Shown piece by piece: positions 7,106 through 56,964 of a DNA stretch of 64,000 nucleotides. The notes under the pieces were generated by a model. The model saw only the letters and a program-made list of their open reading frames with translations. It did no database searches and was not told where the DNA came from. A program made the position numbers and the translations under genes. How positions within the stretch are numbered: the stretch's first letter is position 1; every line of letters begins with the position of its first letter. Source of the DNA: Podarcis vaucheri (taxonomy: Eukaryota); NCBI GenBank assembly GCA_965113315.1, contig OZ220367.1. One strand, given 5' to 3'.

Positions 7106-7318
7106 NNNNNNNNNNNNNNNNNNNNNNNNNNNNNNNNNNNNNNNNNNNNNNNNNNNNNNNNNNNNNNNNNNNNNNNNNNNNNNNNNNNNNNNNNNNNNNN
7201 NNNNNNNNNNNNNNNNNNNNNNNNNNNNNNNNNNNNNNNNNNNNNNNNNNNNNNNNNNNNNNNNNNNNNNNNNNNNNNNNNNNNNNNNNNNNNNNNNNNN
7301 NNNNNNNNNNNNNNNNNN
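7106..7318. promoter_or_regulatory. Masked block (213 N), candidate deeply conserved intronic element/enhancer
   Basis: Irregular length, unique flanks, paired with the next block across a 109-bp spacer containing TAATTA. Function inferred. Confidence 0.55.
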
Positions 7319-7427
7319 GCACTAATTACAAGACGTTTTCCCAGTGCTTATGTAAAATATGACAGAGCAGCAGCTTAGGGAATTGCAAAAAAACTGCTTC
7401 TAATTTCCACTGAGAAACTGACAAACA

Positions 7428-7671
7428 NNNNNNNNNNNNNNNNNNNNNNNNNNNNNNNNNNNNNNNNNNNNNNNNNNNNNNNNNNNNNNNNNNNNNNNNN
7501 NNNNNNNNNNNNNNNNNNNNNNNNNNNNNNNNNNNNNNNNNNNNNNNNNNNNNNNNNNNNNNNNNNNNNNNNNNNNNNNNNNNNNNNNNNNNNNNNNNNN
7601 NNNNNNNNNNNNNNNNNNNNNNNNNNNNNNNNNNNNNNNNNNNNNNNNNNNNNNNNNNNNNNNNNNNNNNN
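7428..7671. promoter_or_regulatory. Masked block (244 N), candidate deeply conserved intronic element/enhancer
   Basis: Second half of a bipartite masked element about 25 kb downstream of exon 4. Confidence 0.55.
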
Positions 7672-8424
7672 TTCTTTGCAGGCAGGAAAAAGAAATACCC
7701 ACACCAACAAAACAGAAACAAAACAAAAAAACGCAACCAACAGCTTATTATTTGGTGTGTGTTACTTAAATTTAAAAGACTCGAGGCAGTTAACTTCCTG
7801 CGTAGCGTTCTAACTTTGCTGTGAAGTTAAAAGCATTGGGGACATTACCTGAGCAAAGGCAGAAGGAGGAGAACAGGCAAGGGCAGAGAGACTTGGGGGT
7901 TGGGGAAGAAAGGCAATACGGTACTGAAATGCAGTCAGACCTAAACACTGCTTTGTGGTTTGGCAACCAAAGTATCAACTGCACTGAGTAGGTTAGCTGG
8001 CATACAAACAAAGGGGGCTGATCATCCTAGAGGGGGCATTTGAACACTGCAGCAAGGGAACAGGAGGCAGTGGCACAACCGTAGCAACAGGTTTCAGTTC
8101 AGGGAAGTCATGGTAACTGAAAATACCAGAGTCCAGGGCCTTTCCTGTGTATTCACAGTAAGATCAGTACTGAATGGCAGCAGACTGGATGGTTCATGCT
8201 ATTTGGGACAGCAGTGGTGGAGAGAATCAGGCATCCCTCCCACTGCAAGACTTTGGAACCCAACTGAAATGGTTGCAGGGAGTGCGACATTAGATAATCT
8301 AGCAATGAAACGACTGGAAAGAGCAACAGGATACAATGTGACTGACTACAACGAGGAAAATCTGGTTTACAATGTTTCACCAGTTATGATTATTCCGAAC
8401 TAGAACAAATTGGTATCAAGAATC

Positions 8425-8978
8425 TTGGTTGGACTATTGCAATGCACGCTACATGGAGCTACCCTTGAAGATGGCTCCAGAAACCGCAGGTAGTGCAAGA
8501 TACTGCTGTCCGGCTATTATGTGGGGCAGTGAGAAGGGAAAGAGCAAATTCACCAAGTGCAATCCAATGTGTTGCTGATGATGTACCAAGTTCTAGATGA
8601 CTTGGGACCTAGTACTGAAAGGAATGCCTTCCTCAACACCTGCCAGCCTGTAAAGAACAGGAGAGAGTCCCAGCTTGTGTTGCTGTCTATGGGCATGGCC
8701 CATAGGGGAATGACATGGAGCAGGGCCTTCCTGTCTATGGCTCCCCAATCTGTGAAGCTCCGAAATGAAATCTGATTGACTTTGTTAATTAAAAACATAT
8801 TTCTTTAGCAAGGCCTTTGGAACATAACTGAATTGGAAACTAAAAGGGAAAGCTTTATTGCACACTGGTTAATGTTTTAATTATCAATACAGAGTTGGTT
8901 ATTATAATAATTGTTCTACTATGTTTCTTATCTTGTTGTTGTTGTTAGCCGCCCTGGAATCCTGCAGGAAGAAGGGTG

Positions 8979-9028
<50 letters not shown>
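8425..9028 (+). mobile_element. 5'-truncated L2 LINE with (AAT)n tail
   Basis: LDYCNA.Y..LPLK ORF2 remnant, a RAF...AP motif, the 3' UTR gttagccgccctgg, and (AAT)n at about 8983-9027. Confidence 0.75.
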
Positions 9029-9031
<3 letters not shown>

Positions 9032-12000: not shown

Positions 12001-14329
12001 AAATCAGTCATAATTCCTGCAGTTTTAGCAAACACCTATGAGGTATTTAAAATGTTTCTGGAGCCACATGTACTTAATCACTGGCTTAAGAGGAACAGGT
12101 GACTTTTGAGTCACCACATTTAGGGACTAGTTTTTGTTGCAGCCTGCAGTGGGCTACATGTAGTCCAAGAATCCCAGAGAATTTCTCCAGTGACTAAGGA
12201 AAATGCATTCCTGAAAGCAAAAGAGTCGTGCCTCTCCCACACTGCTAAACAGTAAACAGCAACAGGGAGAGGAGATGAAAAACTATTCTTTTAAGAGGTA
12301 CTACTTTATGCTTCAGACAGACTAATAAAGTTTAATTGTCTGGAATCTGGTGACTCTTACTGTATAACTTCCCTCTGATATAGGTCTTCCATTTGGATTT
12401 TAAATGCTGGTGAAATCACCGAAATAAAATTTCCGTGAGGTTGGGAAAGAAAAAGAGAGAGGTTTTCCCAACTTTTAAACTTCAAGTTTATCTACAGAGG
12501 TTGATCTAAAATTGGTTCCGCTTCTGGTGATAAAAGAGAACCATGAGGTCATGGCATGAGAAGCCTAGGTAGTTTAAATGACGAGATTAAAATCTGGAAA
12601 CTAGGATGCTTTAAAAACAGATAATGCTTTTAGTGAAAGGCTTTTTGAACACACTCAGGTGACCTGCCTGAAATGAGGCAACAAAGAACTGAACACTTGA
12701 CTCAGAGGTGTAAGGCCCTATATGCTTCCAGTTTACAAAGTTGGTTCACATGGTCAAATTACCTCTATGCAATCCTGCCTCCAGATTCCCTGCCCCCATG
12801 GACACCATCTCTTCCTCTCTCAGGACAATTCCTATTACTGTAGAAGCAGAACCTCGCTTCTGCAAAGTAGCAGCCATAGGACATCCTCCATGGGGATGCA
12901 TCACAGGCGGGTCATTGAGGAGAAGGGCAGGGAGACAAAACTGATGATGTCAGTCAGCCTTCAGATTTTGCACCTTTCTCAGCAGTGAAGGACATATCCC
13001 CTTTTAATCTACAACAAACCAGAAGAGCCTCCTAGTACAAATATGTTACCAGTCCAAAAGATGGTAACAAAAACATTTGAGTCTGAAGCAACTTTTACAT
13101 GTGCATAAGTCACCAGATACAAAAGATGCTAAAATTAAAACACCAGTTATAACAATTATGCATGCTAAGTTTGTTGTCCATTCTCGATCAAGGACATCTT
13201 GACAATGTTTTGCAAGGACACAACCAGCTAGCTGGTTACCCACTAGATCATCTAGCCTTCTGAAAAATATATCAAAACCATTACTTTGATACATCATAAT
13301 TTCCCTCCTTGATCAAACTACTCTCTAATCATCATTTCTAGCTTTACTCTGTCAGTTATAAAGGCAGAAAACAGAAGTTTTGTGCATTTGATTAACTTCC
13401 AAACGGTTCAGCCTTTTCGAAGTTAAAGAGCAGTTACAATTTTAATGTGAACTGAAATTAAATGTTAAAAAGGAAGTTCATTGATTAAAATTTTAATACC
13501 CACAAAATTGTTATTCTAGAAAAGTTTTAGTGTTCCCTCTACCAATTTCTCTAACAGAGAACTATATATACAAAAAAAATTACAATTTACAGCTGCTCGT
13601 GAAATGTTACACTTCTATTTTTATCTTTAATTTGCTTTTATTTTATTTTTTGTTGCCACATGAAGAGGCCATTTCCACTAGTTCCGTTGAAGTTCAGGTA
13701 AGTAAATGCAGGGTACTGCTGGTGGTGATATAACAAAAGCCAGAAGCCTAATGATTAAATCTTGTTGCCTTGTCGTTCCAAAGATAGGGTACTTCAGAAA
13801 GGCCAGGCTTGGAAAAGCATCAATGCCACACAAAAGGCAACTAAAACAGGCTATTGATAGTTCAGAATAAAGAGAGTTATCTGAGGATTTCCAAGATAGT
13901 ATTGCAAAAGAGCTATTGCTATGCAAATTCATAGGGGAAAAGGTAAAAAAATAATAGGTGATATCAAAAAGTTATTCAAGCTTTTGAACAACAGAAACTC
14001 TATGCCTCAGAGTATTATTAATAAAATTATTATAATTGTAATTATAATATAATTTGTCTCTCTAGCCTGAGACAAAGCAAACAAATACTTCCATTATACC
14101 TTCAGTACAGTTAAATAGGCAGTTGTCTACCTAAAGTATCTACATGTATAAAAGTTCAAAAATAACCTGTCTAGAAATGTGTGTGTGTAAATATGTTTAG
14201 AAATAATTGTCAAGAATTAGTTATTTGGCAATGAAGATTTCTGTATATTTGAATGCTTGCACATTTTTTAAATCAACAAAAGCCGGTATCCTAAAAAGAT
14301 ATATCAAACAATGTTAGCATTCTCTTTCT

Positions 14330-22509: not shown

Positions 22510-22665
22510 NNNNNNNNNNNNNNNNNNNNNNNNNNNNNNNNNNNNNNNNNNNNNNNNNNNNNNNNNNNNNNNNNNNNNNNNNNNNNNNNNNNNNNNNNNN
22601 NNNNNNNNNNNNNNNNNNNNNNNNNNNNNNNNNNNNNNNNNNNNNNNNNNNNNNNNNNNNNNNNN
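22510..22665. promoter_or_regulatory. Masked block (156 N), candidate deeply conserved element
   Basis: Flanks carry TAATTA (22395), AACAAT (22416), ATTGG, CACGTG and several CpGs. No repeat sequence adjacent. Confidence 0.55.
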
Positions 22666-24032: not shown

Positions 24033-24388
24033 NNNNNNNNNNNNNNNNNNNNNNNNNNNNNNNNNNNNNNNNNNNNNNNNNNNNNNNNNNNNNNNNNNNN
24101 NNNNNNNNNNNNNNNNNNNNNNNNNNNNNNNNNNNNNNNNNNNNNNNNNNNNNNNNNNNNNNNNNNNNNNNNNNNNNNNNNNNNNNNNNNNNNNNNNNNN
24201 NNNNNNNNNNNNNNNNNNNNNNNNNNNNNNNNNNNNNNNNNNNNNNNNNNNNNNNNNNNNNNNNNNNNNNNNNNNNNNNNNNNNNNNNNNNNNNNNNNNN
24301 NNNNNNNNNNNNNNNNNNNNNNNNNNNNNNNNNNNNNNNNNNNNNNNNNNNNNNNNNNNNNNNNNNNNNNNNNNNNNNNNNNNNNNNN
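24033..24388. promoter_or_regulatory. Masked block (356 N), candidate ultraconserved element
   Basis: Longest block. CpG-retaining unique flanks including GTCACGTGA. Confidence 0.55.
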
Positions 24389-24832: not shown

Positions 24833-24839
24833 CTAACAA

Positions 24840-25172
24840 CGTCTCCACCCCCATCGTTCAGCCCGGACATTGAGGTCCAGTGCTGAGGGCCTTCTGGCGG
24901 TTCCCTCACTGCAAGAGGTGAGGTTACAGGGAACTGGGCAGAGGGCCTTCTCGGTAGTGGTGCCCACCCTGTGGAACGCCCTCCCATCCGATGTGAAGGA
25001 AATAAACAACTATCTTACTTTTAAAAGACATCTGAAGACAGTCCTGTTTAGGGAAGTTTTTAATGTTTAATGCTGTATTGTGTTTTTAATATTCGGTTGG
25101 AAGCTGCCCAGAGTGGCTGGGGAAACCCAGCCAGATGGGTGGGGTATAAATAATAAATAATAATTATTATTA
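24840..25172 (+). mobile_element. Young 5'-truncated L2 LINE (ORF2 C-terminus, 3' UTR, (TAA)n tail)
   Basis: ORF 24870-25070 reads QRAFSVVVPTLWNALP...FKRHLKTVLF. The 3' UTR recurs at 3995 and 59821. Confidence 0.9.
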
Positions 25173-26526
25173 ATATATAAGTTGTCTGCTGTTAGTCCAT
25201 GAATTCCACTGCTGAGCTGTGGTATAAATCTACATCTGCAAGGTCAACAGGCGGTGTTTGGTTCAGAAGACCACAAACGGTACATTACCAATGAAACATG
25301 CATAAATATTGCCCTTTTTAATTATGCTTGCTTCCAGACATAAGTCGTTAAATAGACACATGATCGTTGCACATGAGGATGTGTATAGTTTCTCCCTGTG
25401 ATCACCAAGGAAAATCTTGTCTGTGTCAAGTGACTCACAGATAACTGCATATTTTCCTAAGGGAGAAAGAAGTGGGTTGAAGGAAGACTGAATCATTAGA
25501 TTTTTTTATTTCTACCTCCAGCTCTATAAGGTTGAAAGCTTTAGCATGCCACTCTTTTGCTACTCATCTGTTAATTCAGTAGAACCATTAATGGCAAAAG
25601 TGGCTGGGTATCCCTAGCATTTAAGAGGTCCTTGGTTGAAAACAGGCTGGGGGAGGGTGCAATGGTTTGTGAAAATTGCTGGAGTGAGGGTTGGGGGTGG
25701 AGAGAACTATTTCTACCCTTATTTATTTCATGATGAACCCAACATGTAAAGTAGCTTCCAAGACAGGAGGAGGCTAAAATAAAGGCAACTGATATACAAT
25801 GTGTGCATACCGGAGAGAGAAAAATGCCTGTTTACATGTAGTTTAGCACTCAAAAGAAACTCTGAACAGCTGAAATACCTTATAAATAGCTCAGACCCAG
25901 AGGAAGTGCAAACGTCTGCATTGTGAATTGTAGATCTTAATTACAGACAATGGCTGGTACAGCAAGTACTACAGGAGAAAAAAAACCCAGTGAAACAGTT
26001 GCACTGTTCATGGCTGGCAATAACTCTTCAGGAAAATATTTACTATCAATCAGTTATGAGAAAAGGGACTCCGTGCTCATAAAACAGCACGTTGCTTCTC
26101 ATACCAGCACCATTTTGATTCAGCATAATCTGAATTTAAACGGCTTGTTTCCTGCGGATATAATTTTGGAAATAAATAAAACAAATCTTCTATCAAAATC
26201 TGGAGAATGTGGGAAGGGGAAAGGGAGGGGAGACATGCACATTCTTTCTTCAATCCCTTTGCAAATAACTCTGACTAGGGGTGGGGGAAGGGGGAGACTG
26301 TGAAAATGTAAAATATTCCAGATTAAGGCAAACTAGCCTCATACTTCGATTATGACCAACGTGCCACTGTAAAGAAACTGAAAAGCCTAACCCTTTGGAT
26401 GATTTTAATTATGCTTCATGGAGGCAGAATACTTGTAGGTATTAAGTAAACTTCATTTCAGTTTTACATTAGTTATAACACTTTTTCTTTCCATTTAAGA
26501 AATTATCTCCAAAAGATAATTTAGCA

Positions 26527-29212: not shown

Positions 29213-29551
29213 TCTGCCGCTTGGGCTTGCCGATCGGAAGGTCGGCGGTTCGGATCCCTGCGATGGGGTGAGCTCCCATTGCTCGGTCCCAGCTCCTGTC
29301 AACCTAGCAATTCAAAAGCACGCAGTGCAAGTAGATAAATAAGTACCGCTCTGGCGGGAAGGTAAATGGTGTTTCCGTGCGCTGCTCTGGTTTTGCCAGA
29401 AGCAGCTTAGTCATGCTGGCCACATGACCCAGAAAAGCTGTCTGCGGAAGCGGACGAACGCTGGCTCCCTCGGCCTGTAAAGCGAGATGAGCGCCGCAAC
29501 CCCAGAGTCGTTTGCGACTAGACTAAATTGTCAGGGGTCCCTTTACCTTTT
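29213..29551 (+). mobile_element. Sauria SINE, 5'-truncated
   Basis: B-box-like ggttcggatcc, body matching the 60397 copy, ggtccctttaccttt tail, possible aagtaag target-site duplication. Confidence 0.92.
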
Positions 29552-29989
29552 AAGTAAGAATCAAGGCATCAGTTTGGATACAACGCTACACAAAACGCTT
29601 CACAACTAAGAAGATGCATTTTGCATTACTGAGCTGATGTCCCCCATCTGCCATAGAAGGACTGGACGTCGCCGTATTTTTCAGAGTATTAGGAAAAAGA
29701 CAACCACAAGGCCTCCAGCCCCCCCCCCCCAATTATGAGCCTGAACTCTGACCCTGTATCATCACATTTTAGTTGCTCCACTGGACTCATACAGGACATG
29801 GAACAGGGACTGCAGAGACTTGGGCTCAACCAACATTTCCCAAGTCTTACTGCAAAAGACCCACCACGCCACTAAATCACTTAGTTGCACCCTAAGCTAC
29901 GCTCTTTGCACTCACTTGCTTGATATGTATGTCATGGCTTGCACACTCCCCTCATTCTACAAGGAGGACACTGGAAATTTTTGTTACTG

Positions 29990-32159: not shown

Positions 32160-32249
32160 TTTGGCCACACAGTTTTCAGTCTTCATAGCAGTGCTCCCTA
32201 AGCAAACTGCTTCCTGGTTGATGCAGAGCCTGGCACAGCTATTATAGGT
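32160..32249 (-). CDS. BTRC: BTRC coding exon (equivalent to human exon 4), 90 bp, phase 0/0: TYNSCARLCINQEAVCLGSTAMKTENCVAK
   Basis: Continues the previous exon in frame and matches recalled human TYNSCARLCLNQETVCLASTAMKTENCVAK. Acceptor ttttgtttcttcttcacag, donor gtaagt. Confidence 0.96.
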
Positions 32250-39187: not shown

Positions 39188-39320
39188 NNNNNNNNNNNNN
39201 NNNNNNNNNNNNNNNNNNNNNNNNNNNNNNNNNNNNNNNNNNNNNNNNNNNNNNNNNNNNNNNNNNNNNNNNNNNNNNNNNNNNNNNNNNNNNNNNNNNN
39301 NNNNNNNNNNNNNNNNNNNA
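39188..39320. promoter_or_regulatory. Masked block (133 N) in the intron between the two readable exons, candidate conserved element
   Basis: Unique flanks, no splice consensus at its edges. Confidence 0.45.
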
Positions 39321-39556
39321 AAATTCGTTTGTTAGCTTAAACATAGTTGCCAAAAACTTTGTCCCCTTGTCGTGGTTTTCCAAGGCTGCAAACACACATT
39401 CACACAACCTCCCCCACCCCCAGCCCCCCAGCATTCAATTTACCCCCAAGTCTTTCTTCACAGAATACATGCTAATAAGACCTAATTATATTTACTTCTC
39501 TAAACGGTACATGGCTTTAAACTAGGTTATGTTTCTCTCTGCTGGCTTCTTCTATG

Positions 39557-39756
39557 CACTGGCGGAGGAAGAGAAGTGTGGGAGGAGTGCACCGCCCCCG
39601 GCAGTGTGATCCCGGTGGGTGCCATCGCGGCTGCCCCCCTGCCTGCACTGGGCACCATGCCCCCACAGGCGGCATGCCACACCCCCAGAACGCACGCCAG
39701 CCCCGCCCCTGCCTGCTCTCCGCCCCCCGGTGCTGGAGCATGAAGCTCCGCCACTG
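39557..39756. mobile_element. GC-rich 200-bp hAT-type MITE
   Basis: TIRs cactggcggag / ctccgccactg. Perfect 8-bp TSD cttctatg at 39549-39556 and 39757-39764. Confidence 0.9.
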
Positions 39757-41441
39757 CTTCTATGCAAGAGTAATGGGAAGTGGTCAAAGGTACCCACTAA
39801 ACATTTGAAGTACATGACTTCCCCTAAAGTACATGACTTCCCGTAAAGATTCCTCGAAACTTTAGCTGTAGCTCTGTAGGAGGGCAGCTACAGTTCCCAA
39901 GATTATTTGGGAGAAGTCTTACACTTTAAATGCATGGAGCCAAAATAAAGGCCACCATAGGTTACACCTCCATGTGGAAATTCTGCAATGCATAATAAGC
40001 AGTGCTGTATACCTGCCATGTGTACATAGATCAAGCAGATGTTGCTTGCAAAAGTTCTCTATCTCATATACTTGCACATCACATACTGATGCTGTCCTTT
40101 CATGAGTGAGAATGATTGTTGTGAATTTTAGGGTCATTTTACTAAATAAAAGGACAATAGGAAGTTTAAGGAGTGGCTGGATGTCCAGCCTTATTTCCCC
40201 CCCCCCAACAAATTTGCCCTCTCCTGAGCAAAGGAGAACATAATATACGTTTGCATTCAAAGAAGAAAATAGAACTGTTTTTCAGAAAAGAAACACATTG
40301 CTTTCTCGATTCCTTCTAGGTCCCTATGGGACTATCCAGACAGGGAATTTATTTACCAACGGGATATTGAGATATCACAAATGGATCAATGGCAACAGCT
40401 TTATCCTTTATGCAATATCACACACACAAGCCCCCCTAATATTGGATCTTTCCCAGAAACGGAAAATCTAGATTAAAGGGAGGGTGGGATAGTGATATTG
40501 GTTGAAATGTTGATGCCAACAGTGTTGTGTGGATCCTGCAAAAAAAAATATGCATATCTGAGGAGCACTGATTCACACATACATGGCTGGAAGCTGGAAG
40601 CATATTTGATCTCAAAGATATAGCCTGCAGGCCAATTTGGAATGACTTTGCTTTTCCAATGAGTTCAGCCAAGTAATACCTCTTCTTTATTTACTGTCCA
40701 AGAAAATCTCAGCTGCACCCTGTTGATGCCAGCTACCAGGCCTTACTAACCAGAATGCTACTGTCTGCAAACTGGTAACAGCAGCTGAAGGTTAAGACGA
40801 TGGCATAAACCATCAATAACCCTTGTGTGTAAGGGAGTGCATCTAAATTCCAAGAATCACTTTTTAAATTGGCAGCCAATTTTGTATTAACTGAAAAGCC
40901 TATTAGCTCACCTTTCTTCTGTTCTGGTTCAAGTTTAGATTAGGAATATAACTGAATGTTTGTCCCTTTAGTTATGGCCACACACATAAGAATCAAGGCC
41001 TATTGGTCTGAAAGCTTGCCTGATAGCAATACAATCTTGCTATTCCTCAAGAGGTCAAGGGTGGTTGCAGAATACGTGGATCACTTGTACAGCACATAAC
41101 AAGGAATTCAGTATCCATGCATTACTAGCACAGCAAAGAATCACACCACCTGCTTGACCCACAAGATTGCTCTCTAAGGCACATTACTGGAGCAATGTAC
41201 GATACATAAGAAAGTAAGCTTGCATACTGCTCTGGAAAGATGTGAATTAGCTCCAAGGTGCCTTCCAAAGAACAGCTGTTGTAACTTGAAAACTTATATA
41301 CTCTTTCAGGAAAGAGAGAAAAATAATAATAATTCCTTTACGTGTTTTGCATCTTTCCAAGTTGCAAGGGATGTCAAAGGACTCTAGGTCATTCAAGTAA
41401 AGGGGCGGGGTAGGTTTTGCACACCTAAATTCGGTGCATAC

Positions 41442-41519
41442 CTGCCTGAGTGCATTCTTCTCGGGAATGATCTTCCTGGGGGGCTCGTCATTGTTACAGT
41501 CTTCTCTCTCAGATGAATT
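41442..41519 (-). CDS. BTRC: BTRC coding exon (equivalent to human exon 3), 78 bp, phase 0/0: NSSEREDCNNDEPPRKIIPEKNALRQ
   Basis: Manual translation of the minus strand matches the recalled human beta-TrCP1 segment NSSEREDCNNGEPPRKIIPEKNSLRQ with 2 substitutions. Acceptor ccttttcccctctcatctgcatag, donor gtatgc. Confidence 0.96.
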
Positions 41520-42003
41520 CTATGCAGATGAGAGGGGAAAAGGTGGAAATCATTAATTCAGATATTTTCCTTTCAACACTGATCTAAGAAAGCAAAAAAT
41601 CTGATGTTTTCAGCAACATTACCTATGAGATTTCACTTCCTTAGAATTCTTTTTGTTAAGAGGCGTCAATATTTTTTATTTTGTCTGGCACGCAATTGGA
41701 TAAATTGGAATGAGGGTCTGCCATAGGCATAGCCTGTGACATATCCAGTATCATGGAAAACAGCAAGCAACAATAAACAGACCCTAGACATAATCCTTCA
41801 TGACAGATACCCGTCTAATTAAACAAGACTTTCAAAATATTACAAAGTCAGATTTTTTGTATTCCCAGCGTGTGTCCAAGCACTTCCATAATGCTGGATC
41901 TGAATTCTTCTACATAACTAAAGTGGGATGCCCTGGCTCACAACAATACTAGGGTTTAATACAATGGAATTACTTACACTTCAATGACTTTGATAATGAA
42001 CGT

Positions 42004-42665
42004 TAAGAACCTAAGAAGAGCCTGCTGAACATTCAACTTCATTGGATATCCATGACTTCCAGTGTTATGGAAGAGGGAGAACAACTTTTTTCTATCTATT
42101 TATAAACTTCATGTCACCTCTTATTTGCCTTCTCTCTAAATTGGGAAATCCCAACTACCACAATCATTTTGGTTGCCTTTTTCTGAACCTCTTCCAACTC
42201 TACAAGGTCTTATTTCGTGTGAGGAAACTAGCACTGCACACAGTATTCCAAATGTGGCGGTGCCATAGATTTGTATAACCACCTTATTTGATTTCAATTC
42301 CCTTCCTAATGCTCCCTAGCATTGAATTTGCCTTTTTCACAGCTGCTGCACACTGAGGTCAACATCTTCATTGAGATATCCACTAGGACCCCTCATTCCT
42401 GGTCAGCCACAGAAAGATCCCCTGATAATTTATGTGAAATTATGATTCTTATTCTTTTGCCCTGACTTTACACTTTGCATTGAACTGCATTTTCCATTTT
42501 ACTGACCACTCACTCAGTTTGGAGATGTCCTTTTGGAGCTCTTCACATTTTCTTTTTGTTTTAACAACCCTGAGCAATTTAGCATCATCAGCAAATTTGG
42601 CCACCTCTCTGCTCACTCCTAACTCTAGATCATTTATGATCAAGTTATAAACAGGTCCTAATACT
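42004..42665 (-). mobile_element. CR1 LINE fragment (RT domain to 3' end, with deletions)
   Basis: ORF 42449-42643 reads INDLELGVSREVAKFADDAKL...ELQKD.SKL.EW..KW.MQFN.KCKV; taagaac/taagaagagcctgctg tail. Confidence 0.9.
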
Positions 42666-42779
42666 TATCCTTAATGTTTCCATTAAGATCCAAAAGCTTG
42701 GACAAATAAAAATGTCTTCAGCCTTTATTTAAATGTATCAACTATGGGTGCCAACCAAATGTTGTTTAGGAAAAACAGA

Positions 42780-42950
42780 CTACCTTGGATGGTGGTGGAC
42801 TCTCTTTCATTGTAAGTTTTTAAAAAGGTGTTAGCTAGCCATCTGCCAGGCATTCTTTAGTTGTGTTTCCTGCACTGCAGGGGGTTGGACTAGATTAGAA
42901 TGATCCTTGAATCACTTCCACCTCTACAATTCTATTTTTCTGTGATTGTA
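42780..42950 (+). mobile_element. CR1 LINE 3' end
   Basis: tcctgcactgcagggggttggactagat...ctctacaattctat...ctgtgatt. Confidence 0.75.
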
Positions 42951-42954
42951 TAAA

Positions 42955-43135
42955 TGGGCACAGTCACTAAGAATGACTTGTCACATGTCATTGTCCAAAC
43001 AGCCACTTCCACAAATGGGTCAGAAAGCAAGGCATTGCCCACTGATCGTAATACATGGTTTGGGTAGTTATTTGGGAGACACTCCTTTAGGTACTTGAAT
43101 CCAGAGTTGTTCCAGGCTTTATATGCTAGCAACTG
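42955..43135 (-). mobile_element. L2 ORF2 fragment
   Basis: ORF LAYKAWNNSGFKYLKECL...YP.HVLRS resembles the L2 C-terminal motif. Confidence 0.6.
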
Positions 43136-45740
43136 TATGTTACAAAATTAAGGATCACAATGTCAAAAAAATATTTTTATGGGACTTAGAAATGTAGCAT
43201 GCAAACAGCTCCTGGAAGCAGTGACTTTGTGGAAAGACCAAAATTAGTCCTGTGAGTTGCAACCTAAATACTAAGAGGAACACAGAGGAACTCCCAAATA
43301 CCATGCCACTGTTACAATATAGTTTAGTAAGCTGATATATTTGCTACATACTGACACTAGCTGTTCCAGAAGCTCTTTTACAGTTGAAGACTTTGGTATA
43401 AATAAAGAACGTTATATAGGATATAAAAACAGACAGGATTTCTACCCAACAGGTATTTTGGCTAACCCAAATGGTAAAGACTGAGTTACCATGAATGGAG
43501 TCTGGATAGGAAAGGGTAGACAAAGCACCATCCATTGTCTTGGTCAATCTACTTATAGAGTATGTTTTAAGGAAGGATCTGAAACTGGAAACAGACTAAT
43601 GATGAAGGACATAGTCCATGAAAAGGTTAAAATATGGGTGGGAAATATGGAATTAATAACACAAGTAGAGAAGAAGAAAAAGTAAAACTAGTACATACAT
43701 TATACTTTTAGGGTGGTGCCTGAATACAGTACTAACAAGTGGCAGCACCAAGAATAATACAGTAACATATATTTGAAGCGCATGCTCCCTTTTTTCTCTC
43801 TCCTTCGCCTTCCTTCTAGGATAAATGCATTACCAAATGCCATGGAATTCAACAGCCTTTATGTTGCCTGTCCCAACATGCTTCAAGTTTACCAATTTCT
43901 TCCTTGAAACTAAACAGCTAATTTGAAACCTTTGTTTTATTCATTATCTTTATAGGTGGCAAGACTAAGAGGTTGGCTGAACAAAGACCAGACAATGACT
44001 GCCAAGTGCATATGGTGGCTCACAGCTTGCCGTCGCCCCATTCTACTGCACCAACACAGCAGACTATTAAAAAGGAGCGCTGCTCATGCACTTTTGTCAG
44101 CAAGTTAAGTTACGCTTGGCAAAGGATGAAAACTGGAAAAGATTATGCTCCTTAAGAAGCAGCAAAGATGGAACCGATTGCTTGGAAACTGGAAATCTTG
44201 TTTCCATGTGGACAACAAGCTTTAGAACACAGAAAATTCTTTGCAATCTTTAGATTCCGCTATGCATTTTAAAAATAAAATAAATAAGTACATCTGCAGG
44301 CCTCACTGAACTGCTCATCAGGTCTCATAGCACTATTTGGGGCCTAGGGTCTGGGCCCTTGGGAGCAAAAATTAGGAATTGCTGGTGCCCTCTATTGACC
44401 AATAAAGGAATGTTTTAAGTGAAATTCTAAAACTGTGAATACAGAATACAGCATCAAGGAAATCAAAACTGCAGTAAAATCACATGGGAGGGAGAAAGCA
44501 GAAGCCTCCCCATAGCCCACCCCAAAAGATGTGGGTGAAAACGCTGAGAGCTCTTGCTTGTACTAGATTGAATGCTTTCTTTTCACCAGGCTGCTCTCAT
44601 TTGACAAATATTTTTACAAAAGCAAGATATGTGGAATCTCTCTCACAAGCAGTACAATTTCAGGCATGAAGCACAAGGCACAATTAATCAGGTCTTTTTT
44701 GAGACCAGTTTACCTCATAGTATGTGCTCTGGTAATCTTCCCCCACGTCTAGCACTCAGCAAGCCAACATTTCCAGAATGACAGCTCAACCCTTGAGCTC
44801 AACCCACATGGTATTGGTTGAAGGTAATGTTTGGAATTATCCCATGATAACCAAATGCTTATCAGAAAGACAGTGGGATTATGTGGGGCAGTGAAGTATG
44901 GAGGACACACAAAAAAATCCCACAATAAAAATGCCTCCTATAAGCAAGCATTGGATATGTAACATAACTGTAAGGAAAGTCTGAAAAGAAGTATGAGCTT
45001 CTTTGGCCTCTCTTGTGAAACAACATTTCCATGGAACTTAATCAGGATTCTAGTACAGAAAATTCTGGGAAAGCTGAGCATGTGAATGGGGTTTGAAATC
45101 CTCATTCTTATCTTAACAGTTAGGCACACTTGAACTATCAGCAGCAAGGTAAAGATCACTTCTCTTTTACAATGCTAACAGGAGCATGTTTTTGAGACAA
45201 TCCTATGTTCTAATCTTAGACAGTTAAGTGTCTAAAAGAGACCCGTGACAAATCCCATTTGTGTGAGAAGACTTGTAATTAACAGAATTCACTTGCATGG
45301 CAACATAGCTACCCAACGCCCGGTACTACCCCTAAACCCAATACACAATTTATTAATATCAATGACATAGGAAACTCAGCCGCCACCCCTACCTAAAATG
45401 TCCTCATAGTTGCACTGAAGCAACTTAACTGTGCTATTGCAACTTTCATGCCTATAAACCATCCAAACAAATGCTGGAATCAAATGCAATGGATGGATGA
45501 AAGCATTCCAAAGGACTATCAGCTGAACAGAACCACCTTTTTAGACAGCCCCTCATCTCACAATAGATATCACAATAACCATGCCAACTACGGAGATGCT
45601 TTTCTTCTTCTTCTCAGGGTGGGAGGAGGAAAAGACTGTACTTGCCAGCACTAATTATAAAGCCATACAGATGCAGCACTTTTTCAAATGTCTATCTGTG
45701 TGTGAGAGAGGAACCATGTCTATGCAGAGAGCACTTTTTA

Positions 45741-45952
45741 NNNNNNNNNNNNNNNNNNNNNNNNNNNNNNNNNNNNNNNNNNNNNNNNNNNNNNNNNNNN
45801 NNNNNNNNNNNNNNNNNNNNNNNNNNNNNNNNNNNNNNNNNNNNNNNNNNNNNNNNNNNNNNNNNNNNNNNNNNNNNNNNNNNNNNNNNNNNNNNNNNNN
45901 NNNNNNNNNNNNNNNNNNNNNNNNNNNNNNNNNNNNNNNNNNNNNNNNNNNN
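45741..45952. promoter_or_regulatory. Masked block (212 N), candidate ultraconserved element
   Basis: First of three blocks within 826 bp in a repeat-free stretch. Confidence 0.55.
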
Positions 45953-46034
45953 AAAAGGAGTTCATTTCTGGGCCTTGTGCGTTCATGCTAGTATGCAGAA
46001 ACTGATTAATTGTCGTCGTGTGCTGGTCGGCTGT

Positions 46035-46342
46035 NNNNNNNNNNNNNNNNNNNNNNNNNNNNNNNNNNNNNNNNNNNNNNNNNNNNNNNNNNNNNNNNNN
46101 NNNNNNNNNNNNNNNNNNNNNNNNNNNNNNNNNNNNNNNNNNNNNNNNNNNNNNNNNNNNNNNNNNNNNNNNNNNNNNNNNNNNNNNNNNNNNNNNNNNN
46201 NNNNNNNNNNNNNNNNNNNNNNNNNNNNNNNNNNNNNNNNNNNNNNNNNNNNNNNNNNNNNNNNNNNNNNNNNNNNNNNNNNNNNNNNNNNNNNNNNNNN
46301 NNNNNNNNNNNNNNNNNNNNNNNNNNNNNNNNNNNNNNNNNN
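46035..46342. promoter_or_regulatory. Masked block (308 N), candidate ultraconserved element
   Basis: The 82-bp spacer before it has TGATTAATTG and several CpGs. Confidence 0.55.
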
Positions 46343-46386
46343 ACAGCTGAGCATCTCCTTTGCACAAAGCCCCCAAGCGCAAGGCT

Positions 46387-46566
46387 NNNNNNNNNNNNNN
46401 NNNNNNNNNNNNNNNNNNNNNNNNNNNNNNNNNNNNNNNNNNNNNNNNNNNNNNNNNNNNNNNNNNNNNNNNNNNNNNNNNNNNNNNNNNNNNNNNNNNN
46501 NNNNNNNNNNNNNNNNNNNNNNNNNNNNNNNNNNNNNNNNNNNNNNNNNNNNNNNNNNNNNNNNNN
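46387..46566. promoter_or_regulatory. Masked block (180 N), candidate conserved element
   Basis: Separated from the previous block by only 44 readable bases. Confidence 0.5.
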
Positions 46567-47888
46567 GGAAAAATATATATTGTTTATGCAGGCAAAACAC
46601 TTGTCATTATCCCAGAGGCCAGAATTGGTCTTTAAAACATCCTATTGCCTTTAAAACCTGCAACCAATAAGGAAAATTGCATGCTTGCTTTTGGGGGAGA
46701 AAAGCAGTTACAAATGTCTTGTCATGTGCATTCCCTATTTTAGCAGAGCTTCTGGTGACAAACAAATCTCTTCCAAACAAGTAGGACTTATGCAAGCCAA
46801 TGTATATGAATAGACAAGGATATCTGGAACAGGGGCAGAGGGAGATGAGAAGAGAAATGAAATGAGCTGGTAGGGATTAAACATGTATAGCCTGACATGA
46901 GCATTTCTGGTCTATAAAACTGAGACACAGCAGCAGCAGAGTCAGTTTGCAACTAATTCCGTAAGTACCTCAAGGACAATCTATAAGGTCAAACACAACA
47001 TTCTAGGCACTTTGGCAGGCTGATGTTAGGTTTCCTGGTAGTCCAGGGGAGAGGCTTTTGTGCCCAAATTGGATTTCATAATCTTGTGGGACACTGCAGG
47101 GGATAAGTAAGTAAGGGCTGAAAAAATTCATTTGAATTACTTTTGCGACTCTGCCACAGTATGGATTAAAGAGAAGGAGGGAAATAAATGCCAATCTAAT
47201 GGTTGCAGGAGAGTAAAATTCCTATAGTCCCTTTCCAATAACCTTTGTAAGTGATAGATGAGTCCAAGAGCCTTGCAACTGTAAAGGGACCGTCAGCATC
47301 CCGATTTCATAAATGCAGTTTGGCAGATTATAAATCTCAGCTCCTTCAAAAAGCACTGGTATGAAAACTGACATAGCTCGTGCAAAAGAAAATGTAAACT
47401 TCTTTACAAAAATTATGGGCTCAACACCCAATTAAATCATTTAACAGACTCCATTCTCTCATCTCAAGAAAAATAACACACTTATGGCCAAAACACAACT
47501 TTTGCAATGTTAAGGTTTTGAAGATAAGAATCAGGAAGCAATGCCAAACAGAAACAAACCTCAGACTAGTTCACCAAACTATAGAGAATGTCTTGAGCCC
47601 TGAAGATTATCCCCAACAAGAGAACTGTGTCAATGATCTGCTCTCTGAACATTCAAACACACTGCAACAAACCAGCGATGCATACTGCATTTTCCTAGCT
47701 TTTAAGAAGTTTCATGTAACTGAAGATTTTATTTGTAAGAGGCTTATGTTTACACAAATATGGCAGTAATTTACATTATCATCAATTAAAGGGAGAATGT
47801 GGGAATGTAAAAATCTTTACAGGTAGTCTCCCTAGTCATCTGATCCAGTGCTATAGGAAATGAGTTTGTTTCCTACAAATGAAAAATA

Positions 47889-48234
47889 CAGTGGTGCCTC
47901 GCAAGACGAAATTAATCTGTTTCGTGAGTATCTTCGTCTAGCGGTTTTTTCGTCTTGCGAAGCAACCCTATTAGCGGCTTAGCGGATTAGCACTATTAGC
48001 GGTTTAGCGGCTATTAAAGGCTTAGCAGCTTAGCTGCTAAAAGGCTATTAAAGGCTTAGCGGCTTAGAAAAAGGGGGGGGAGCGAAAAAAAATCTCAAGA
48101 CTCGCAAGACATTTTCGTCTTGCGAAGCAAGCCCATAGGGAAATTCGTCCTGCGAAGCGCATTGAAAAACGGAAAACCCTTTCGTCTAGCGGGTTTTCCG
48201 TCTTGCGAGGCATTCGTCTTGCGGGGCACCACTG
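47889..48234. mobile_element. Tc1/mariner (Tigger-like) MITE with an internal TTAGCGGC-like tandem array
   Basis: TIRs cagtggtgcctcgcaagacgaa / ttcgtcttgcggggcaccactg with TA flanks. Confidence 0.92.
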
Positions 48235-53300: not shown

Positions 53301-54796
53301 GCTGGTTCAATAATGAAAGATACAGAATTTCTTGTGCCCAAACAAGCACTTAAGCATCTTACAGCACTCATATGTACCTTCCGGTCATTGGGATTTTGAG
53401 TCAAAAATTCACACACATTATAATTTGGAAGCGGGGAAACCTGAGCTTTAAAGCTGATCAGATTTTAGTAATGAAGTGACATCATAAAGTAGTTGGGGGC
53501 AAGAGCAAGGCAAAAAGGAGGGCTATATAGTCACTGCATTGCAGTCCAGGAAAAAAAGCAGGAAAAGAGGTTCTAGTCACACCACCATTTTTCTGAGGCC
53601 CGGGGCGGGGGTGAGGTGAATTAGATTTACAAAATCTGGAGAAAGGAACAAAAAATAAACCAGAAACTGTGTGTCTTTCAATGTACAAATTCCAATCAGA
53701 GGAGAAATAATCTTTGTATATGGACATGGACACACTGGTTCAAGATGGCTAGTTATGTCTGCAATTAGTATGACCATTACTAAGTGATGGCACTTTCTGT
53801 TTAAAAACAGTGTGATTGCTATAACAACATGGTTAAACAGTTTGACAAAATATTCAATTAATGTGGTCTGTTAATTCCTCTTCAGAACATCTCCATGGCA
53901 AGATGTTTCTTTCATTTGGACAAGGCCATATTGAGGTCTACAGTCTATTTCTACAGATAAACACATATAGACCTTCCTTTCTGTTTATAACAATATAAAT
54001 GACTTTATTTTATTTTCCATCCTATTTGCTAAATGGTTAGATAATGCACTTAGGTATCTGAAGAGTGTAGAATTCCTTCTCTAACACTAGGTATATTTGT
54101 AATTGTTTGAGTTTCTTAAAAACAACCCTTAAAGAATGTATACTTTAAAATGAAATGAAAGATATCATGTGCTACCTAAATTATGCATAACTCATTTCAC
54201 GTTCTTATTTGCAACATACTTTACTACTGTGTGAGATATACTTCAATCTCACCCATTCCCAAAATGTTAATAGCTTCAACATTACCAGAAATTTTATATC
54301 TTGATTCTGAAAGCTTTATTTTAAGCTAAATAATTCCTTGAAGACTCACAAGATGATATCTAGCAGATCACCCAACCCCCAAATGAAGCTTCAATGTGAT
54401 AACCTTGGCTGAGTCAGCCTCATTCTTTTCAGGCTTCTTCGTGTCTTTTTTCTTATTCTACCATTTCTGAATTTAAAACTCTTAGGAATAGTAAGCTTTG
54501 TTGAATAAGCATTTGGTGCACATTTTGCTGTTGTAAATCAATTCATCAGCCCAGATTAAATTTAAGAAATCTATAATCTCAGGAAATCTCCATCTTCCCC
54601 CTTGGAATCCAACGCTGAAAAGCACTGAACAGATGCAAGTGCAATTCATTTCTATAGGGATGCGTCAGCTGATCACCTTGAATTGCCATGTGCAGAAACA
54701 AACGTGCAGGAAAGAAGTTAAATTAGCCAGCTGCAGCCAAAATGAGAAAATTGTGCAGGACTGAAAAAATAAACAAATTTGGTGTGGCATAAGCAC

Positions 54797-54953
54797 TTGT
54801 AGACCACAGCCTACTTCAAATGCAGGAAGTTTCCTGGCCACAGAGAGTATCTGATAAAGTGCAACATGAGCCTTTGTAGACTCCAATCAATGACATCAGA
54901 TGAGCACAGTAGACAGGAAACTTCCTGCATAGAAAGTAGGCTGCAGCTTACAA
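54797..54953. repeat. Imperfect inverted repeat, arms about 59 bp, loop 39 bp
   Basis: cagcctacttcaaatgcaggaagtttcctg...atctgat pairs with atcagat...caggaaacttcctgcatagaaagtaggctg. Confidence 0.85.
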
Positions 54954-56856
54954 AAAGCTGCCACAATAAAGGATAACCTTCTAAATGTCTTGGTTAGGGT
55001 ATGTCAGGCACATGAGACCCCCACCTTGCAAAGGAGGTCTGTTTCAGTACATGGATGGGGCATTCCCTTGGGCTCCAGGGTGGAAGAAAGGCAGTATAAA
55101 TCTAAGAAAATAAGGTGCCTAGGGTACCTTTTGAAATGGCTGATACTGGGTTCAGAATCGTCTGACATTGTTTACTTGCTAACCTTGTAACAAATTATAT
55201 GTGCAATGTTGTCACTGAACTTATAAAAAAGAAAGGAGTGTGGTTGAGGACAGAGACAGATAGACACACTGGCTGATGGTTCCTTTTTTCATTGCTGTTA
55301 TTCAGAAGGTACTCAATGTTCACAAGACTAAATATAATTTATTCTAATGTATGAAATATGTGGTTGTAAGCATCTGGTTGGATACTGTTAGAACAGTATG
55401 ATGGACTACATGGGCCACTGGCATGATTCAGAAAGCTGTTCTTAAGTGTTGGTGCTGTCAAACACCACTCCATTGTTGTTGCTGTTGCTGTTGTTTGGAC
55501 ATGCCCAAAACTAGAACATTGGAACTCAGTCTTGATGGAAATAAGAGCTATCACTGGATGCAAATGACCAAAGACCCTTCAGGCAGCAGTAGATGGAATC
55601 ATTTGTGGGGCTGCGCCGTTCACCTCCTTCTTGCGGAGTCGCTGCAGCATACCGGAATGGAAAAAGGGAGGCGTGCAGCAGAAGCAGCAGGGTCAGTATA
55701 GTGCAAACACGCCAGCAGGACTGTTGTGTTTCCACCATCATGCACTTGTTGTCGTACCCCTCATCCTTTCTGTCCTCATAGGCTGCAACAACTCAACGGG
55801 ATGGAGGTCAGGTGAGTGCTGCAGTCCCACCACACCTTTAGGTATACTGTTTAGATGCCACACCGCAAGAAGATGTTGAGATGACAACCCATCTTTTAAC
55901 AGCAGCCTAGATGACCATATGTCAGGAATGGAAGCTCCAGCTCCAATAGAGGCATTGGTAACAAGAATCTGGAATACTCTTTAATTATTGTTTTGAATTT
56001 TGAGTCACTCATTTATAAATGCTTAATTACCATGATGAAATTTAAGAATGAAGTATTTAGAAAAATTGTGAATGTAAATTAGATTAATGTATTTAATTTG
56101 GAATAAGAGGAAATTATCCTATACAAAGGAAATTATTATGTAAATTGAAGTAAGCAATTTATACTAGAGCTATGATGCCTAATGGATTGAGAATTATTAT
56201 GTTAAAAAAACAACAACCCTGGAATTTTATGGAATTTTATTTAGGTATATTATCAGTAGAATAAAGTCAAGATATCTAAGGCTAACAATGGTTTCCCTCT
56301 TACCTAGCACCTTGCATTTTCAACTGTAGTTCCTATACAGAGCAGCCCACAGGCAGATCAATATTTACTAAGCCACTCTACTATTCAACGTGATCTTAAA
56401 AGATACCCTGGTCTTCCATCCCCTCGCCAGGGCATCTAATTATACTATACTCCATTGTACAAAGCAACCACTAGCTGCACTTTTGCCATTAGACGCAATA
56501 CATGACTGAGTTTCATCTTGGAGGTGTACAGGACTAGCTGGGAACCTAGAGGAAAAGGTGTGACAATGGCAACACACAAACCTGAGCTTGTGCTTCCTCA
56601 CTGTAGAGAACAGGGTACCCATGCAAGCTGCCCTGGAATTACATGCAAATCCAATTATACATTTAAGGTCCCTGTCCCCCTGCTGCTTCAGATCTCCAAT
56701 CTCTTGCAAAGCCAACTTAAAAAACCCCACACACAACAACTTACATTAACATGCTGTATTTTACCCTCGCCACCAGAAATACTAAGGGTGCTATTTGTAA
56801 TTGTATTCNNNNNNNNNNNNNNNNNNNNNNNNNNNNNNNNNNNNNNNNNNNNNNNN

Positions 56857-56964
56857 NNNNNNNNNNNNNNNNNNNNNNNNNNNNNNNNNNNNNNNNNNNN
56901 NNNNNNNNNNNNNNNNNNNNNNNNNNNNNNNNNNNNNNNNNNNNNNNNNNNNNNNNNNNNNNNN
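56857..56964 (-). CDS. BTRC: Probable masked BTRC exon 2 (human: 108 bp, CSMPRSLWLGC...TAFQ) inside the N block 56809-56964
   Basis: Bases are N. On the minus strand the block begins right after ...ttttttttccctgagtgtggtaactccttgccttAG, a canonical acceptor. I found no exon 2 in the readable sequence. The lower boundary assumes the human exon length. Confidence 0.6.

What the first reader, a model, noticed from the sequence alone, without database searches (positions are those of the whole stretch)
7106..56964. Array of nine masked 133-356 bp blocks in BTRC introns: probable ultraconserved/deeply conserved regulatory elements
Seen: nine N runs of irregular length (213, 244, 156, 356, 133, 212, 308, 180, 156 bp). 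Some are separated by only 44-109 readable bases. All sit in unique, repeat-poor DNA, while obvious repeats elsewhere are left unmasked, so this is neither repeat masking nor typical scaffolding. Known: BTRC lies between LBX1 and FBXW4/FGF8 (the SHFM3 locus) and its introns hold long-range developmental enhancers. From memory, human uc.305-uc.309 map in BTRC introns as a pair upstream of exon 3, a pair shortly after exon 4 and one far into intron 4, which is the layout seen here. Inference: the blocks are non-coding sequence more conserved than the readable exons, forming a genomic regulatory block in which BTRC is a bystander host for enhancers of LBX1/FGF8.
Basis: partly seen in the sequence, partly recalled or inferred. 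Interest (0 to 1): 0.9.

Follow-up and report, generated by a model that had tools for sequence, protein, structure and literature searches.

The report
Masked conserved elements in lizard BTRC
The nine blanked-out stretches are deliberate masks, not sequencing gaps, and they most likely cover an already catalogued cluster of extremely conserved DNA elements (plus one alternative exon) inside the BTRC gene of a lizard, so the finding is real but ordinary.

Summary
Nine N runs lie at the stated places; one is 132 nt, not 133. The gene is BTRC on the minus strand of a lizard close to Anolis. Exon 3 (41519-41442) and exon 4 (32249-32160) are readable.

The runs are not assembly gaps. Eight of nine lengths are 8k+4 (P about 5e-7). 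Readable islands of 44-109 nt separate neighbours. Flanks are unique, and repeats, including a very high-copy one, are left readable. The scan noted the same length rule on other pieces of this genome, at FOXP2 and elsewhere.

The blocks therefore mark lizard sequence that is near-identical to the reference. Published work already places uc.306, uc.308 and uc.309 in BTRC introns. It also places one of the 52 densest human ultraconserved clusters and tested VISTA elements there.

- The upstream group is a triplet.
- One block lies in intron 3.
- The "pair after exon 4" lies 7.8-9.7 kb away.
- Block 56809-56964 probably hides alternative exon 2, so it is not non-coding.
- FGF8 is the less likely target, because Btrc shares the Lbx1 domain.

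Verdict: already known, low interest.

The parts
56809..56964 (-). Masked block 9 (156 nt, 8k+4). Probably alternative coding exon 2 of BTRC (108 nt, residues 17-52) plus about 48 nt of the downstream intron.
   Evidence: On the minus strand the upstream edge reads T8-CCC...CCTTGCCTTAG|N. AG with at least 12 of 18 pyrimidines occurs at 1.07% of minus-strand positions, and only this block has it. An Anolis BTRC-like protein carries exon 2, but tblastn finds no readable copy in the window (best 18.5 bits).
46387..46566 (.). Masked block 8 (180 nt), intron 2. Its start is 352 nt (a multiple of 8) from the start of block 7, across a 44-nt readable island.
   Evidence: The start-to-start distance is 8x44 and the island is 44 nt (4 mod 8).
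46035..46342 (.). Masked block 7 (308 nt), intron 2. It is the middle of the tripartite element 45741-46566.
45741..45952 (.). Masked block 6 (212 nt), intron 2, 4.2 kb upstream of exon 3. Its start is not a multiple of 8 from block 7's (294 nt, which is 6 mod 8), so a net indel lies in the 82-nt island.
   Evidence: Contigs of four relatives are collinear with the window up to 45702, 38 nt from the block.
41442..41519 (-). BTRC exon 3 (78 nt, 26 codons), readable, flanked by an AG acceptor and a GT donor.
   Evidence: sequence; E 2e-10 to 6ttu_T residues 53-78, 24 of 26 identical.
39188..39319 (.). Masked block 5 (132 nt), in intron 3, 2.1 kb downstream of exon 3.
   Evidence: No splice-like edge.
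32160..32249 (-). BTRC exon 4 (90 nt, 30 codons), readable, with acceptor ...TTCTTCACAG| and donor |GTAAGT.
   Evidence: sequence; E 8e-14 to 6ttu_T residues 78-108. It is 100% identical to Anolis sagrei XP_060632161.1 over this exon.
24033..24388 (.). Masked block 4 (356 nt, the longest), 7.8 kb downstream of exon 4.
   Evidence: The upstream edge ends in AG, but with only 8 of 18 pyrimidines.
22510..22665 (.). Masked block 3 (156 nt), 9.5 kb downstream of exon 4.
7428..7671 (.). Masked block 2 (244 nt), 24.5 kb downstream of exon 4. It pairs with block 1 across a 109-nt island.
7106..7318 (.). Masked block 1 (213 nt), the only length that is 8k+5. This implies one net 1-nt indel against the reference, or two overlapping hits offset by 1 nt.

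Best explanation
The nine N runs are deliberate masks that keep the true length of the hidden sequence. They therefore mark the cores of sequence that has stayed near-identical between lizard and human. Eight blocks, grouped as about five elements, sit in BTRC introns 2, 3 and 4. They correspond to the published ultraconserved cluster of human BTRC. The ninth block most likely covers the alternative coding exon 2 with its downstream intron flank.

Shown here: the runs are masks rather than gaps; the gene is BTRC; the exon positions; and the literature record of UCEs in BTRC. Inferred: that the reference is human; that each block is orthologous to a named human element; and that the intronic blocks act as transcription-factor-bound developmental enhancers inside the LBX1/BTRC regulatory domain, with LBX1 or BTRC a more likely target than FGF8.
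For: - Lengths: eight of nine are 8k+4, and the exception is 8k+5 (P 4.8e-7).
- Starts fall on no fixed grid in window coordinates (start mod 8 = 2,4,6,1,4,5,3,3,1), so the 8-base grid belongs to the other sequence.
- Blocks 7 and 8 start 352 nt (8x44) apart across a 44-nt island, as one gapless match interrupted by mismatches would give.
- A 44-nt 'contig' between two real gaps is implausible.
- Flanks are unique and not duplicated. Repeats, including a very high-copy one, are readable.
- Exons 3 and 4 keep order and strand across block 5, and relatives' contigs are collinear up to 38 nt from block 6.
- CpG observed/expected is 0.44-0.51 within 50 nt of block edges against 0.24 background (permutation p 0.007). 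This fits constraint or hypomethylation spilling over the edges.
- Literature: uc.306 and uc.308 are non-exonic in BTRC (PMC3626580). uc.309 is antisense to a Btrc intron (PMC8749388). The BTRC 'middle' is one of 52 top human UCE clusters, with 11 UCEs in at most 25 kb and one exon intersected (PMC13513235). VISTA hs326 is a positive limb enhancer, and hs324 and hs939 were negative (PMC3637097). Btrc and Lbx1 share one TAD (PMC10020157).
- Exon 2 reading.
Against: - The hidden letters were not read, on instruction. Identity to human, orthology to uc.30x and non-coding status are all indirect.
- The masking algorithm is inferred from lengths only. Word size, length threshold and mismatch tolerance are unknown.
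- No exon for residues 109 onward is readable in the 32 kb downstream of exon 4, so one of blocks 1-4 could hide exon 5.
- The acceptor at block 9 has a 9% chance of appearing at one of nine edges by accident.
- Homeodomain TAAT cores are not enriched in the flanks (p 0.14).
- The 533 nt next to block 6 are no more conserved among close relatives than the rest of the intron: 4 differences in 533 nt against 34 in 4329 nt. Power is low at about 0.8% divergence.
- Two of three VISTA elements named at the human locus were negative in reporter assays.
Confidence: 0.8

Rival explanations
1. The runs are true assembly gaps whose lengths were estimated by scaffolding.
For: The scan's program labels N runs generically as assembly gaps. 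Lengths are irregular at first sight. Three of four relatives' contig sets lose cover in the last 0.5-1.4 kb before block 6, though the tool warns that a hole proves nothing.
Against: Eight of nine lengths are 8k+4. Islands of 44, 82 and 109 nt would be absurdly short contigs. Flanks are unique, of normal composition and not duplicated. Exon order and strand are preserved across the runs. Earlier first-reader notes report the same length rule at other UCE-rich loci of this genome (s1-856311, s1-852835; unchecked by me).
Confidence: 0.03
2. The runs are masked repeats or low-complexity DNA.
For: Hard masking of repeats is the commonest reason for N blocks of irregular length.
Against: Microsatellites, SINE-like families and a repeat with word depth up to 3e5 are all left readable. 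No block is adjacent to a repeat. Repeat maskers do not give lengths quantised in steps of 8.
Confidence: 0.02
3. Several blocks, not just block 9, hide coding exons of BTRC (for example exon 5) or other transcribed exons. The array would then be largely exonic rather than regulatory.
For: No exon for residues 109 onward is readable downstream of exon 4. Block 4's upstream edge ends in AG. The dedUCE table counts one exon intersected by the human cluster. uc.308 is reported to overlap an mRNA.
Against: Exons 3 and 4, with 24 of 26 and 28 of 30 residues identical to human, are not masked, so ordinary coding conservation does not trigger the mask. Only block 9 has a credible acceptor. uc.306, uc.308 and uc.309 are classed as non-exonic or intronic. 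Blocks up to 356 nt and tripartite groups of 826 nt exceed a plausible size for BTRC's internal exons: the 497 residues after exon 4 are spread over what I recall as about 11 exons, roughly 135 nt each.
Confidence: 0.12
4. The intronic blocks are enhancers of FGF8, the first reader's alternative target, rather than of LBX1 or BTRC.
For: The Lbx1/Fgf8 boundary is described as leaky, and the two domains are connected by an additional loop (PMC10020157). One study treats the whole LBX1-FGF8 interval as a single TAD (PMC11031364). hs326 is reported as limb-positive.
Against: The known Fgf8 AER enhancers lie in Fbxw4, in a separate domain. Btrc lies with Lbx1 in the Lbx1 domain.
Confidence: 0.1

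Closest known systems
Human ultraconserved elements uc.306, uc.308 and uc.309 in BTRC introns (Bejerano-type UCEs; T-UCR literature)
   Same: Same host gene and intronic position. They come as several elements spread over tens of kb. Sizes are comparable: 224 and 277 bp in human against 132-356 nt here. Spacing is roughly proportional: uc.306 to uc.308 is 33.8 kb and uc.308 to hs326 is 20.6 kb in human, against about 22 kb and about 17 kb between the block groups here. This proportion is a lead only, because it is not anchored on exons.
   Different: One-to-one orthology is not shown, because the letters are hidden. The defining 100% human-mouse-rat identity was not tested.
dedUCE cluster 39, the BTRC 'middle' (PMC13513235 Table 2)
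   Same: A dense array in the middle of BTRC: 11 elements of at least 100 bp within 25 kb, one of which intersects an exon. This matches an array in which one block probably covers exon 2.
   Different: That cluster is defined on placental mammals (at least 97% identity). Here the comparison is lizard against the mask reference. Coordinates of the 11 elements were not available.
Genomic regulatory blocks, that is CNE arrays around developmental transcription-factor genes with bystander host genes
   Same: An array of extreme non-coding conservation inside a housekeeping-type gene (an E3 ligase receptor) that neighbours a homeobox gene (LBX1) in the same TAD.
   Different: No paper found here names BTRC as a bystander or assigns these elements to LBX1. 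BTRC itself responds to nearby enhancers, so it may be a real target.
Ultraconserved alternative exons with conserved intron flanks
   Same: Block 9 starts at an acceptor and is 48 nt longer than the 108-nt alternative exon. This is the pattern of an exon conserved together with its splicing-control flank.
   Different: The exon's presence under the mask is inferred, not seen. No splicing data exist for this species (one search found no RNA holder).

Membership tests
Assembly gap | Length is arbitrary or fixed by convention, and the gap separates real contigs | tested here: not met
   Eight of nine lengths are 8k+4. Islands of 44, 82 and 109 nt lie between runs.
Assembly gap | Usually sits at repeats, low complexity or extreme composition | tested here: not met
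   The nearest listed repeat is 332-2377 nt away, and flanks are unique and not duplicated. Flank GC is 0.42-0.43 against 0.40 overall.
Repeat masking | Repeated sequence is masked throughout | tested here: not met
   Microsatellites, SINE-like families and a very high-copy repeat remain readable.
Ultraconserved element (Bejerano 2004 definition) | At least 200 bp | tested here: inconclusive
   Five of nine masks are at least 200 nt. However, mask length is only a proxy for the conserved length.
Ultraconserved element (Bejerano 2004 definition) | 100% identity between human, mouse and rat | not testable with these tools
Ultraconserved element (Bejerano 2004 definition) | The orthologous human locus carries catalogued UCEs | tested here: met
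   uc.306 and uc.308 are listed in BTRC with hg19 coordinates. uc.309 lies in a Btrc intron.
Conserved non-coding element or genomic regulatory block | Non-coding | tested here: inconclusive
   Eight blocks lack splice-like edges and lie between or after mapped exons. Block 9 is probably coding exon 2. Exon 5 is unaccounted for.
Conserved non-coding element or genomic regulatory block | Conservation above the neutral level across distant vertebrates | tested here: inconclusive
   Only indirect evidence: the mask rule and CpG retention at the edges. A shallow comparison among close relatives shows no extra constraint in the flank of block 6.
Conserved non-coding element or genomic regulatory block | Array spans a developmental regulator in conserved synteny | not tested
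   LBX1 and FGF8 are outside the window. The link rests on mouse and human literature.
Developmental enhancer | Drives tissue-specific reporter expression | not testable with these tools
   The literature names one positive (hs326) and two negative (hs324, hs939) VISTA elements at the human locus.
BTRC (FBXW1A) gene | Exons encode the BTRC-specific N-terminal region in the right order and strand, with splice sites | tested here: met
   The closest named protein is an Anolis FBXW1A-like protein.

The most novel reading that the evidence does not exclude
Suppose the masks are plain unions of exact words, which the 8k+4 rule and the in-step 44-nt island suggest. Each block would then be a perfect, indel-free match between lizard and human of 132-356 nt, after roughly 320 million years of separation by my recollection. 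That would put the BTRC array among the longest perfectly conserved amniote sequences. It would include an alternative coding exon conserved at every synonymous site, together with 48 nt of its intron, which would point to an unrecognised RNA-level control of the beta-TrCP1 isoform switch.
Probability: 0.15. Interest if true: 0.35.

Novelty: already known. Interest (0 to 1): 0.1.

Why it matters
For biology it adds little. The ultraconserved cluster in BTRC introns has been catalogued since 2004 and was re-described in 2026, and its extension to reptiles is expected for such elements.

Its practical value is for the scan itself. In this genome, N runs with lengths of 8k+4 are a footprint of the masking procedure, so they should be read as 'reference-like, deeply conserved sequence hidden here' and not as gaps. 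Similar first-stage findings at other loci can then be settled quickly. It also warns that a masked block may hide a conserved exon, as exon 2 probably is here, so gene models across such blocks should not be called broken.

Tried and rejected
- Rfam at gathering thresholds found nothing in the window, and ARAGORN found no tRNA.
- TAAT/ATTA homeodomain cores in the 100-nt flanks are not enriched (p 0.14).
- Pfam on four long open frames found nothing, including the reverse-transcriptase-looking frame 42452-42664 and the GC-rich frames 39555-39887.
- Flank-against-flank alignment shows no duplication.
- The sequencing-run search returned coded organisms and no RNA holder, so no splicing test was possible.
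- Read laying on 39741-45740, a stretch without N, showed collinear contigs of four relatives. It showed no extra conservation next to block 6, and cover is lost near the block in three of four runs, which the tool says proves nothing.
- Supplements of PMC13513235 and PMC8749388 are not held, so coordinates of the 11 dedUCE elements, uc.305, uc.307 and uc.309 could not be obtained.
- Searches for a paper that assigns the BTRC intronic elements to LBX1 found none.
- The supplement search also printed short probe snippets of human UCE transcripts. I did not use, copy or search them.

Left out on purpose:
- Laying reads over any N run.
- Fetching the BTRC locus of Anolis or other species with the look-up of encoding contigs, which would have brought in the masked letters.
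- Joining exons 3 and 4 into a spliced model. The exons were searched apart, by reference.


Full report
**Observation.** Neighbouring runs are separated by readable islands of 109, 82 and 44 nt. The rest of the window is ordinary vertebrate intron-like DNA of about 40% G+C.

**Host gene and organism.** Two short exons are readable on the minus strand.
- Exon 3 is 41519-41442: 78 nt, acceptor ...CTGCATAG|, donor |GTATGC. Its translation matches residues 53-78 of human F-box/WD repeat-containing protein 1A (BTRC, PDB 6ttu chain T) with 24 of 26 residues identical (E 2e-10).
- Exon 4 is 32249-32160: 90 nt, acceptor ...TTCTTCACAG|, donor |GTAAGT. It matches residues 78-108 (E 8e-14).

A search of 1.84 billion representative proteins with exon 4 returned BTRC fragments and one 568-residue BTRC. 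The best hit, 100% identical over exon 4, is XP_060632161.1, 'F-box/WD repeat-containing protein 1A-like [Anolis sagrei ordinatus]'. The window therefore comes from a lizard close to, but not identical with, that Anolis, since exon 3 differs at two residues. Eight coded organisms hold 60-88% of the sampled words of a 7-kb stretch, so this is a clade with many sequenced close relatives. I searched the exons apart, by reference, and did not build a joined spliced model.

**Are the runs gaps?** The scan's program asked that continuity be tested first. Four lines of evidence say these are masks of true length, not gaps.

1. Eight of nine lengths are 4 mod 8, and the ninth is 5 mod 8. A further note reports the same rule in FOXP2 introns (s1-852835). 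For a pre-named class the chance of at least 8 of 9 is 4.8e-7.
2. The starts are on no fixed grid in window coordinates (start mod 8 = 2,4,6,1,4,5,3,3,1). The 8-base stride must therefore belong to the other sequence in a comparison. Each mask looks like the union of words of length 4 mod 8, sampled every eighth base of a reference. Blocks 7 and 8 start exactly 8x44 nt apart, and their 44-nt island is itself 4 mod 8, as expected for one gapless match interrupted by mismatches. The 12-nt island noted elsewhere in this genome (s1-850659) fits the same arithmetic. The 213-nt block implies one net 1-nt indel.
3. Contigs of 44-109 nt between real gaps are implausible.
4. Flanks are unique, not duplicated across the run, and 332-2377 nt from the nearest listed repeat. 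Exons 3 and 4 keep their order and strand across block 5. Contigs of four related organisms are collinear with the window from 39741 to 45702, which is 38 nt from block 6.

**Repeat masking is excluded.** Microsatellites and three interspersed families with 83-93% identical copies stay readable. So does a repeat at about 41.94-43.14 kb, whose word depth in relatives' contigs reaches 3e5 against a baseline of about 100.

**What the masks imply.** Together with the word-grid arithmetic, the most economical reading is that each block is lizard sequence that matches human DNA almost or entirely without change over 132-356 nt. Ordinary coding conservation does not trigger the mask: exons 3 and 4, with 24 of 26 and 28 of 30 residues identical to human, are readable. 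These exons are shorter than the shortest mask, however, so a length threshold could also explain that.

One indirect sign of constraint reaches into the readable flanks. CpG observed/expected is 0.44-0.51 within 50 nt of block edges against 0.24 in the rest of the window (permutation p 0.007). Two other proxies gave nothing. TAAT cores are not enriched (p 0.14). The 533 nt next to block 6 carry 4 differences in one relative, the same rate as elsewhere in that relative (34 in 4329 nt). Power is low at this shallow divergence. Three of four relatives lose contig cover in the last 0.5-1.4 kb before block 6. That would fit a filter removing human-like contigs, but the tool states that a hole proves nothing, so I give it no weight.

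**Layout along the gene (5' to 3' on the minus strand).**
- Block 9 (56964-56809).
- Blocks 8, 7 and 6 (46566-45741), a tripartite group of 826 nt lying 4.2-5.0 kb upstream of exon 3.
- Exon 3.
- Block 5, in intron 3, 2.1 kb downstream of exon 3.
- Exon 4.
- Block 4, 7.8 kb downstream of exon 4, and block 3, 9.5 kb downstream.
- Blocks 2 and 1, 24.5-25.1 kb downstream.

**Block 9 is probably not non-coding.** On the gene strand its upstream edge reads a T8-CCC tract followed by ...CCTTGCCTTAG|. AG with at least 12 of 18 pyrimidines occurs at 1.07% of minus-strand positions, and it is found at this block only. That gives p 0.011 for this block, or 0.09 for any of nine. The Anolis protein aligns without gaps to human residues 1-108, including the 36 residues (17-52) of the alternative exon 2. 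Yet tblastn finds no readable trace of those residues in the window (best 18.5 bits, which is noise). A 156-nt mask would hold the 108-nt exon plus 48 nt of intron. I put this at about 0.65-0.7.

**An open point: exon 5.** No exon for residues 109 onward is readable in the 32 kb downstream of exon 4 (P0007). Exon 5 is therefore either beyond the window or under one of blocks 1-4. Only block 4 ends in AG on its upstream edge, with a poor pyrimidine tract (8 of 18).

**What is known.**
- uc.306 (chr10:103,212,039-103,212,262) and uc.308 (chr10:103,245,812-103,246,088; hg19) are listed as non-exonic in BTRC (PMC3626580 Table 2 and supplement file 8).
- uc.309 is antisense to a Btrc intron (PMC8749388; PMC10086085).
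- A 2026 analysis of the dedUCE catalogue lists the middle of BTRC as one of only 52 human clusters with more than 10 UCEs within 25 kb. It has 11 elements, one of which intersects an exon. BTRC is one of five host genes in that list not known to bind nucleic acids (PMC13513235).
- At the human locus, VISTA hs326 (chr10:103,266,649-103,267,972) is cited as a positive limb enhancer, and hs324 and hs939 as negative (PMC3637097). That hs326 lies inside BTRC rests on my memory of the gene's end near 103.317 Mb in hg19.
- Distances in human are 33.8 kb (uc.306 to uc.308) and 20.6 kb (uc.308 to hs326). Between the block groups here (6-8, 4, 1-2) they are about 22 and 17 kb, ratios of 0.65 and 0.81. 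That is compatible with orthology, but it is not anchored on exons and is only a lead.
- uc.305 and uc.307 could not be verified.

**Mechanism.** Shown: the elements lie in BTRC introns. From the literature: in mouse limb buds, Lbx1 and Btrc share one regulatory domain. The Fgf8 AER enhancers lie in Fbxw4, in a separate domain that interacts across a leaky boundary. Btrc itself responds when enhancers are moved into its domain (PMC10020157). Another study treats the whole interval as one TAD with sub-domains (PMC11031364). Inferred: the intronic blocks are cores of transcription-factor-bound developmental enhancers serving LBX1 and/or BTRC, with FGF8 the less likely target. The exon 2 block is an alternative exon constrained together with its splicing-control flank. 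I found no paper that assigns these elements to LBX1 or calls BTRC a bystander.

**Verdict.** It needs corrections on layout, on block 9 and on the likely target gene. Nothing here goes beyond a catalogued UCE cluster plus an artefact of the scan's own masking, so the finding is already known and of low interest. Reading or retrieving the hidden letters, the one decisive test, was barred and is left to a person with access.

Noticed in passing
window 41940-43140: A very high-copy interspersed repeat. Summed word depth in relatives' contigs reaches 3e5 against a baseline of about 100, with dozens of internal 'joints' typical of diverged copies. The open frame 42452-42664 (minus strand) has a reverse-transcriptase look (…FADDAKLL…) but gives no Pfam hit at E 0.01.
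   Followed up: partly
window 29220-29552, 60428-60743, 5233-5307 (inverted): A SINE-like family with 84-93% identical copies. Residues 110-125 of the Anolis sagrei RefSeq model XP_060632161.1 match these copies weakly (E 0.36-0.38). This hints that the 140-residue model may run from BTRC exon 4 into a SINE-derived exon, either exonisation or a mis-prediction.
   Followed up: partly
window, within 50 nt of each N-run edge: CpG observed/expected is about twice the background: 0.44-0.51 against 0.24, permutation p 0.007. This fits constraint or hypomethylation around the hidden cores.
   Followed up: yes
window 39520-39890: A G+C-rich stretch, open in all three minus-strand frames for 80-111 codons, 200-570 nt from masked block 5. 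It has no Pfam hit and does not reach the CpG-island criteria. Its nature is unknown.
   Followed up: partly
window 54797-54953: An inverted repeat with 59-nt arms, 76% complementary, separated by 39 nt (I12). It lies in intron 2, about 1.9 kb downstream of block 9 on the gene strand. It was not folded.
   Followed up: no
window 2909-3182 and 47887-48170; 3996-4076, 25042-25174 and 59823-59899: Two further interspersed repeat families, 83-92% identical, in both orientations. All copies are left readable.
   Followed up: no
window 41308: Two of four related organisms carry a 16-nt purine-rich insertion behind 41308, in intron 3 about 130 nt downstream of exon 3 (table 4). It is an ordinary indel polymorphism between relatives.
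   Followed up: no
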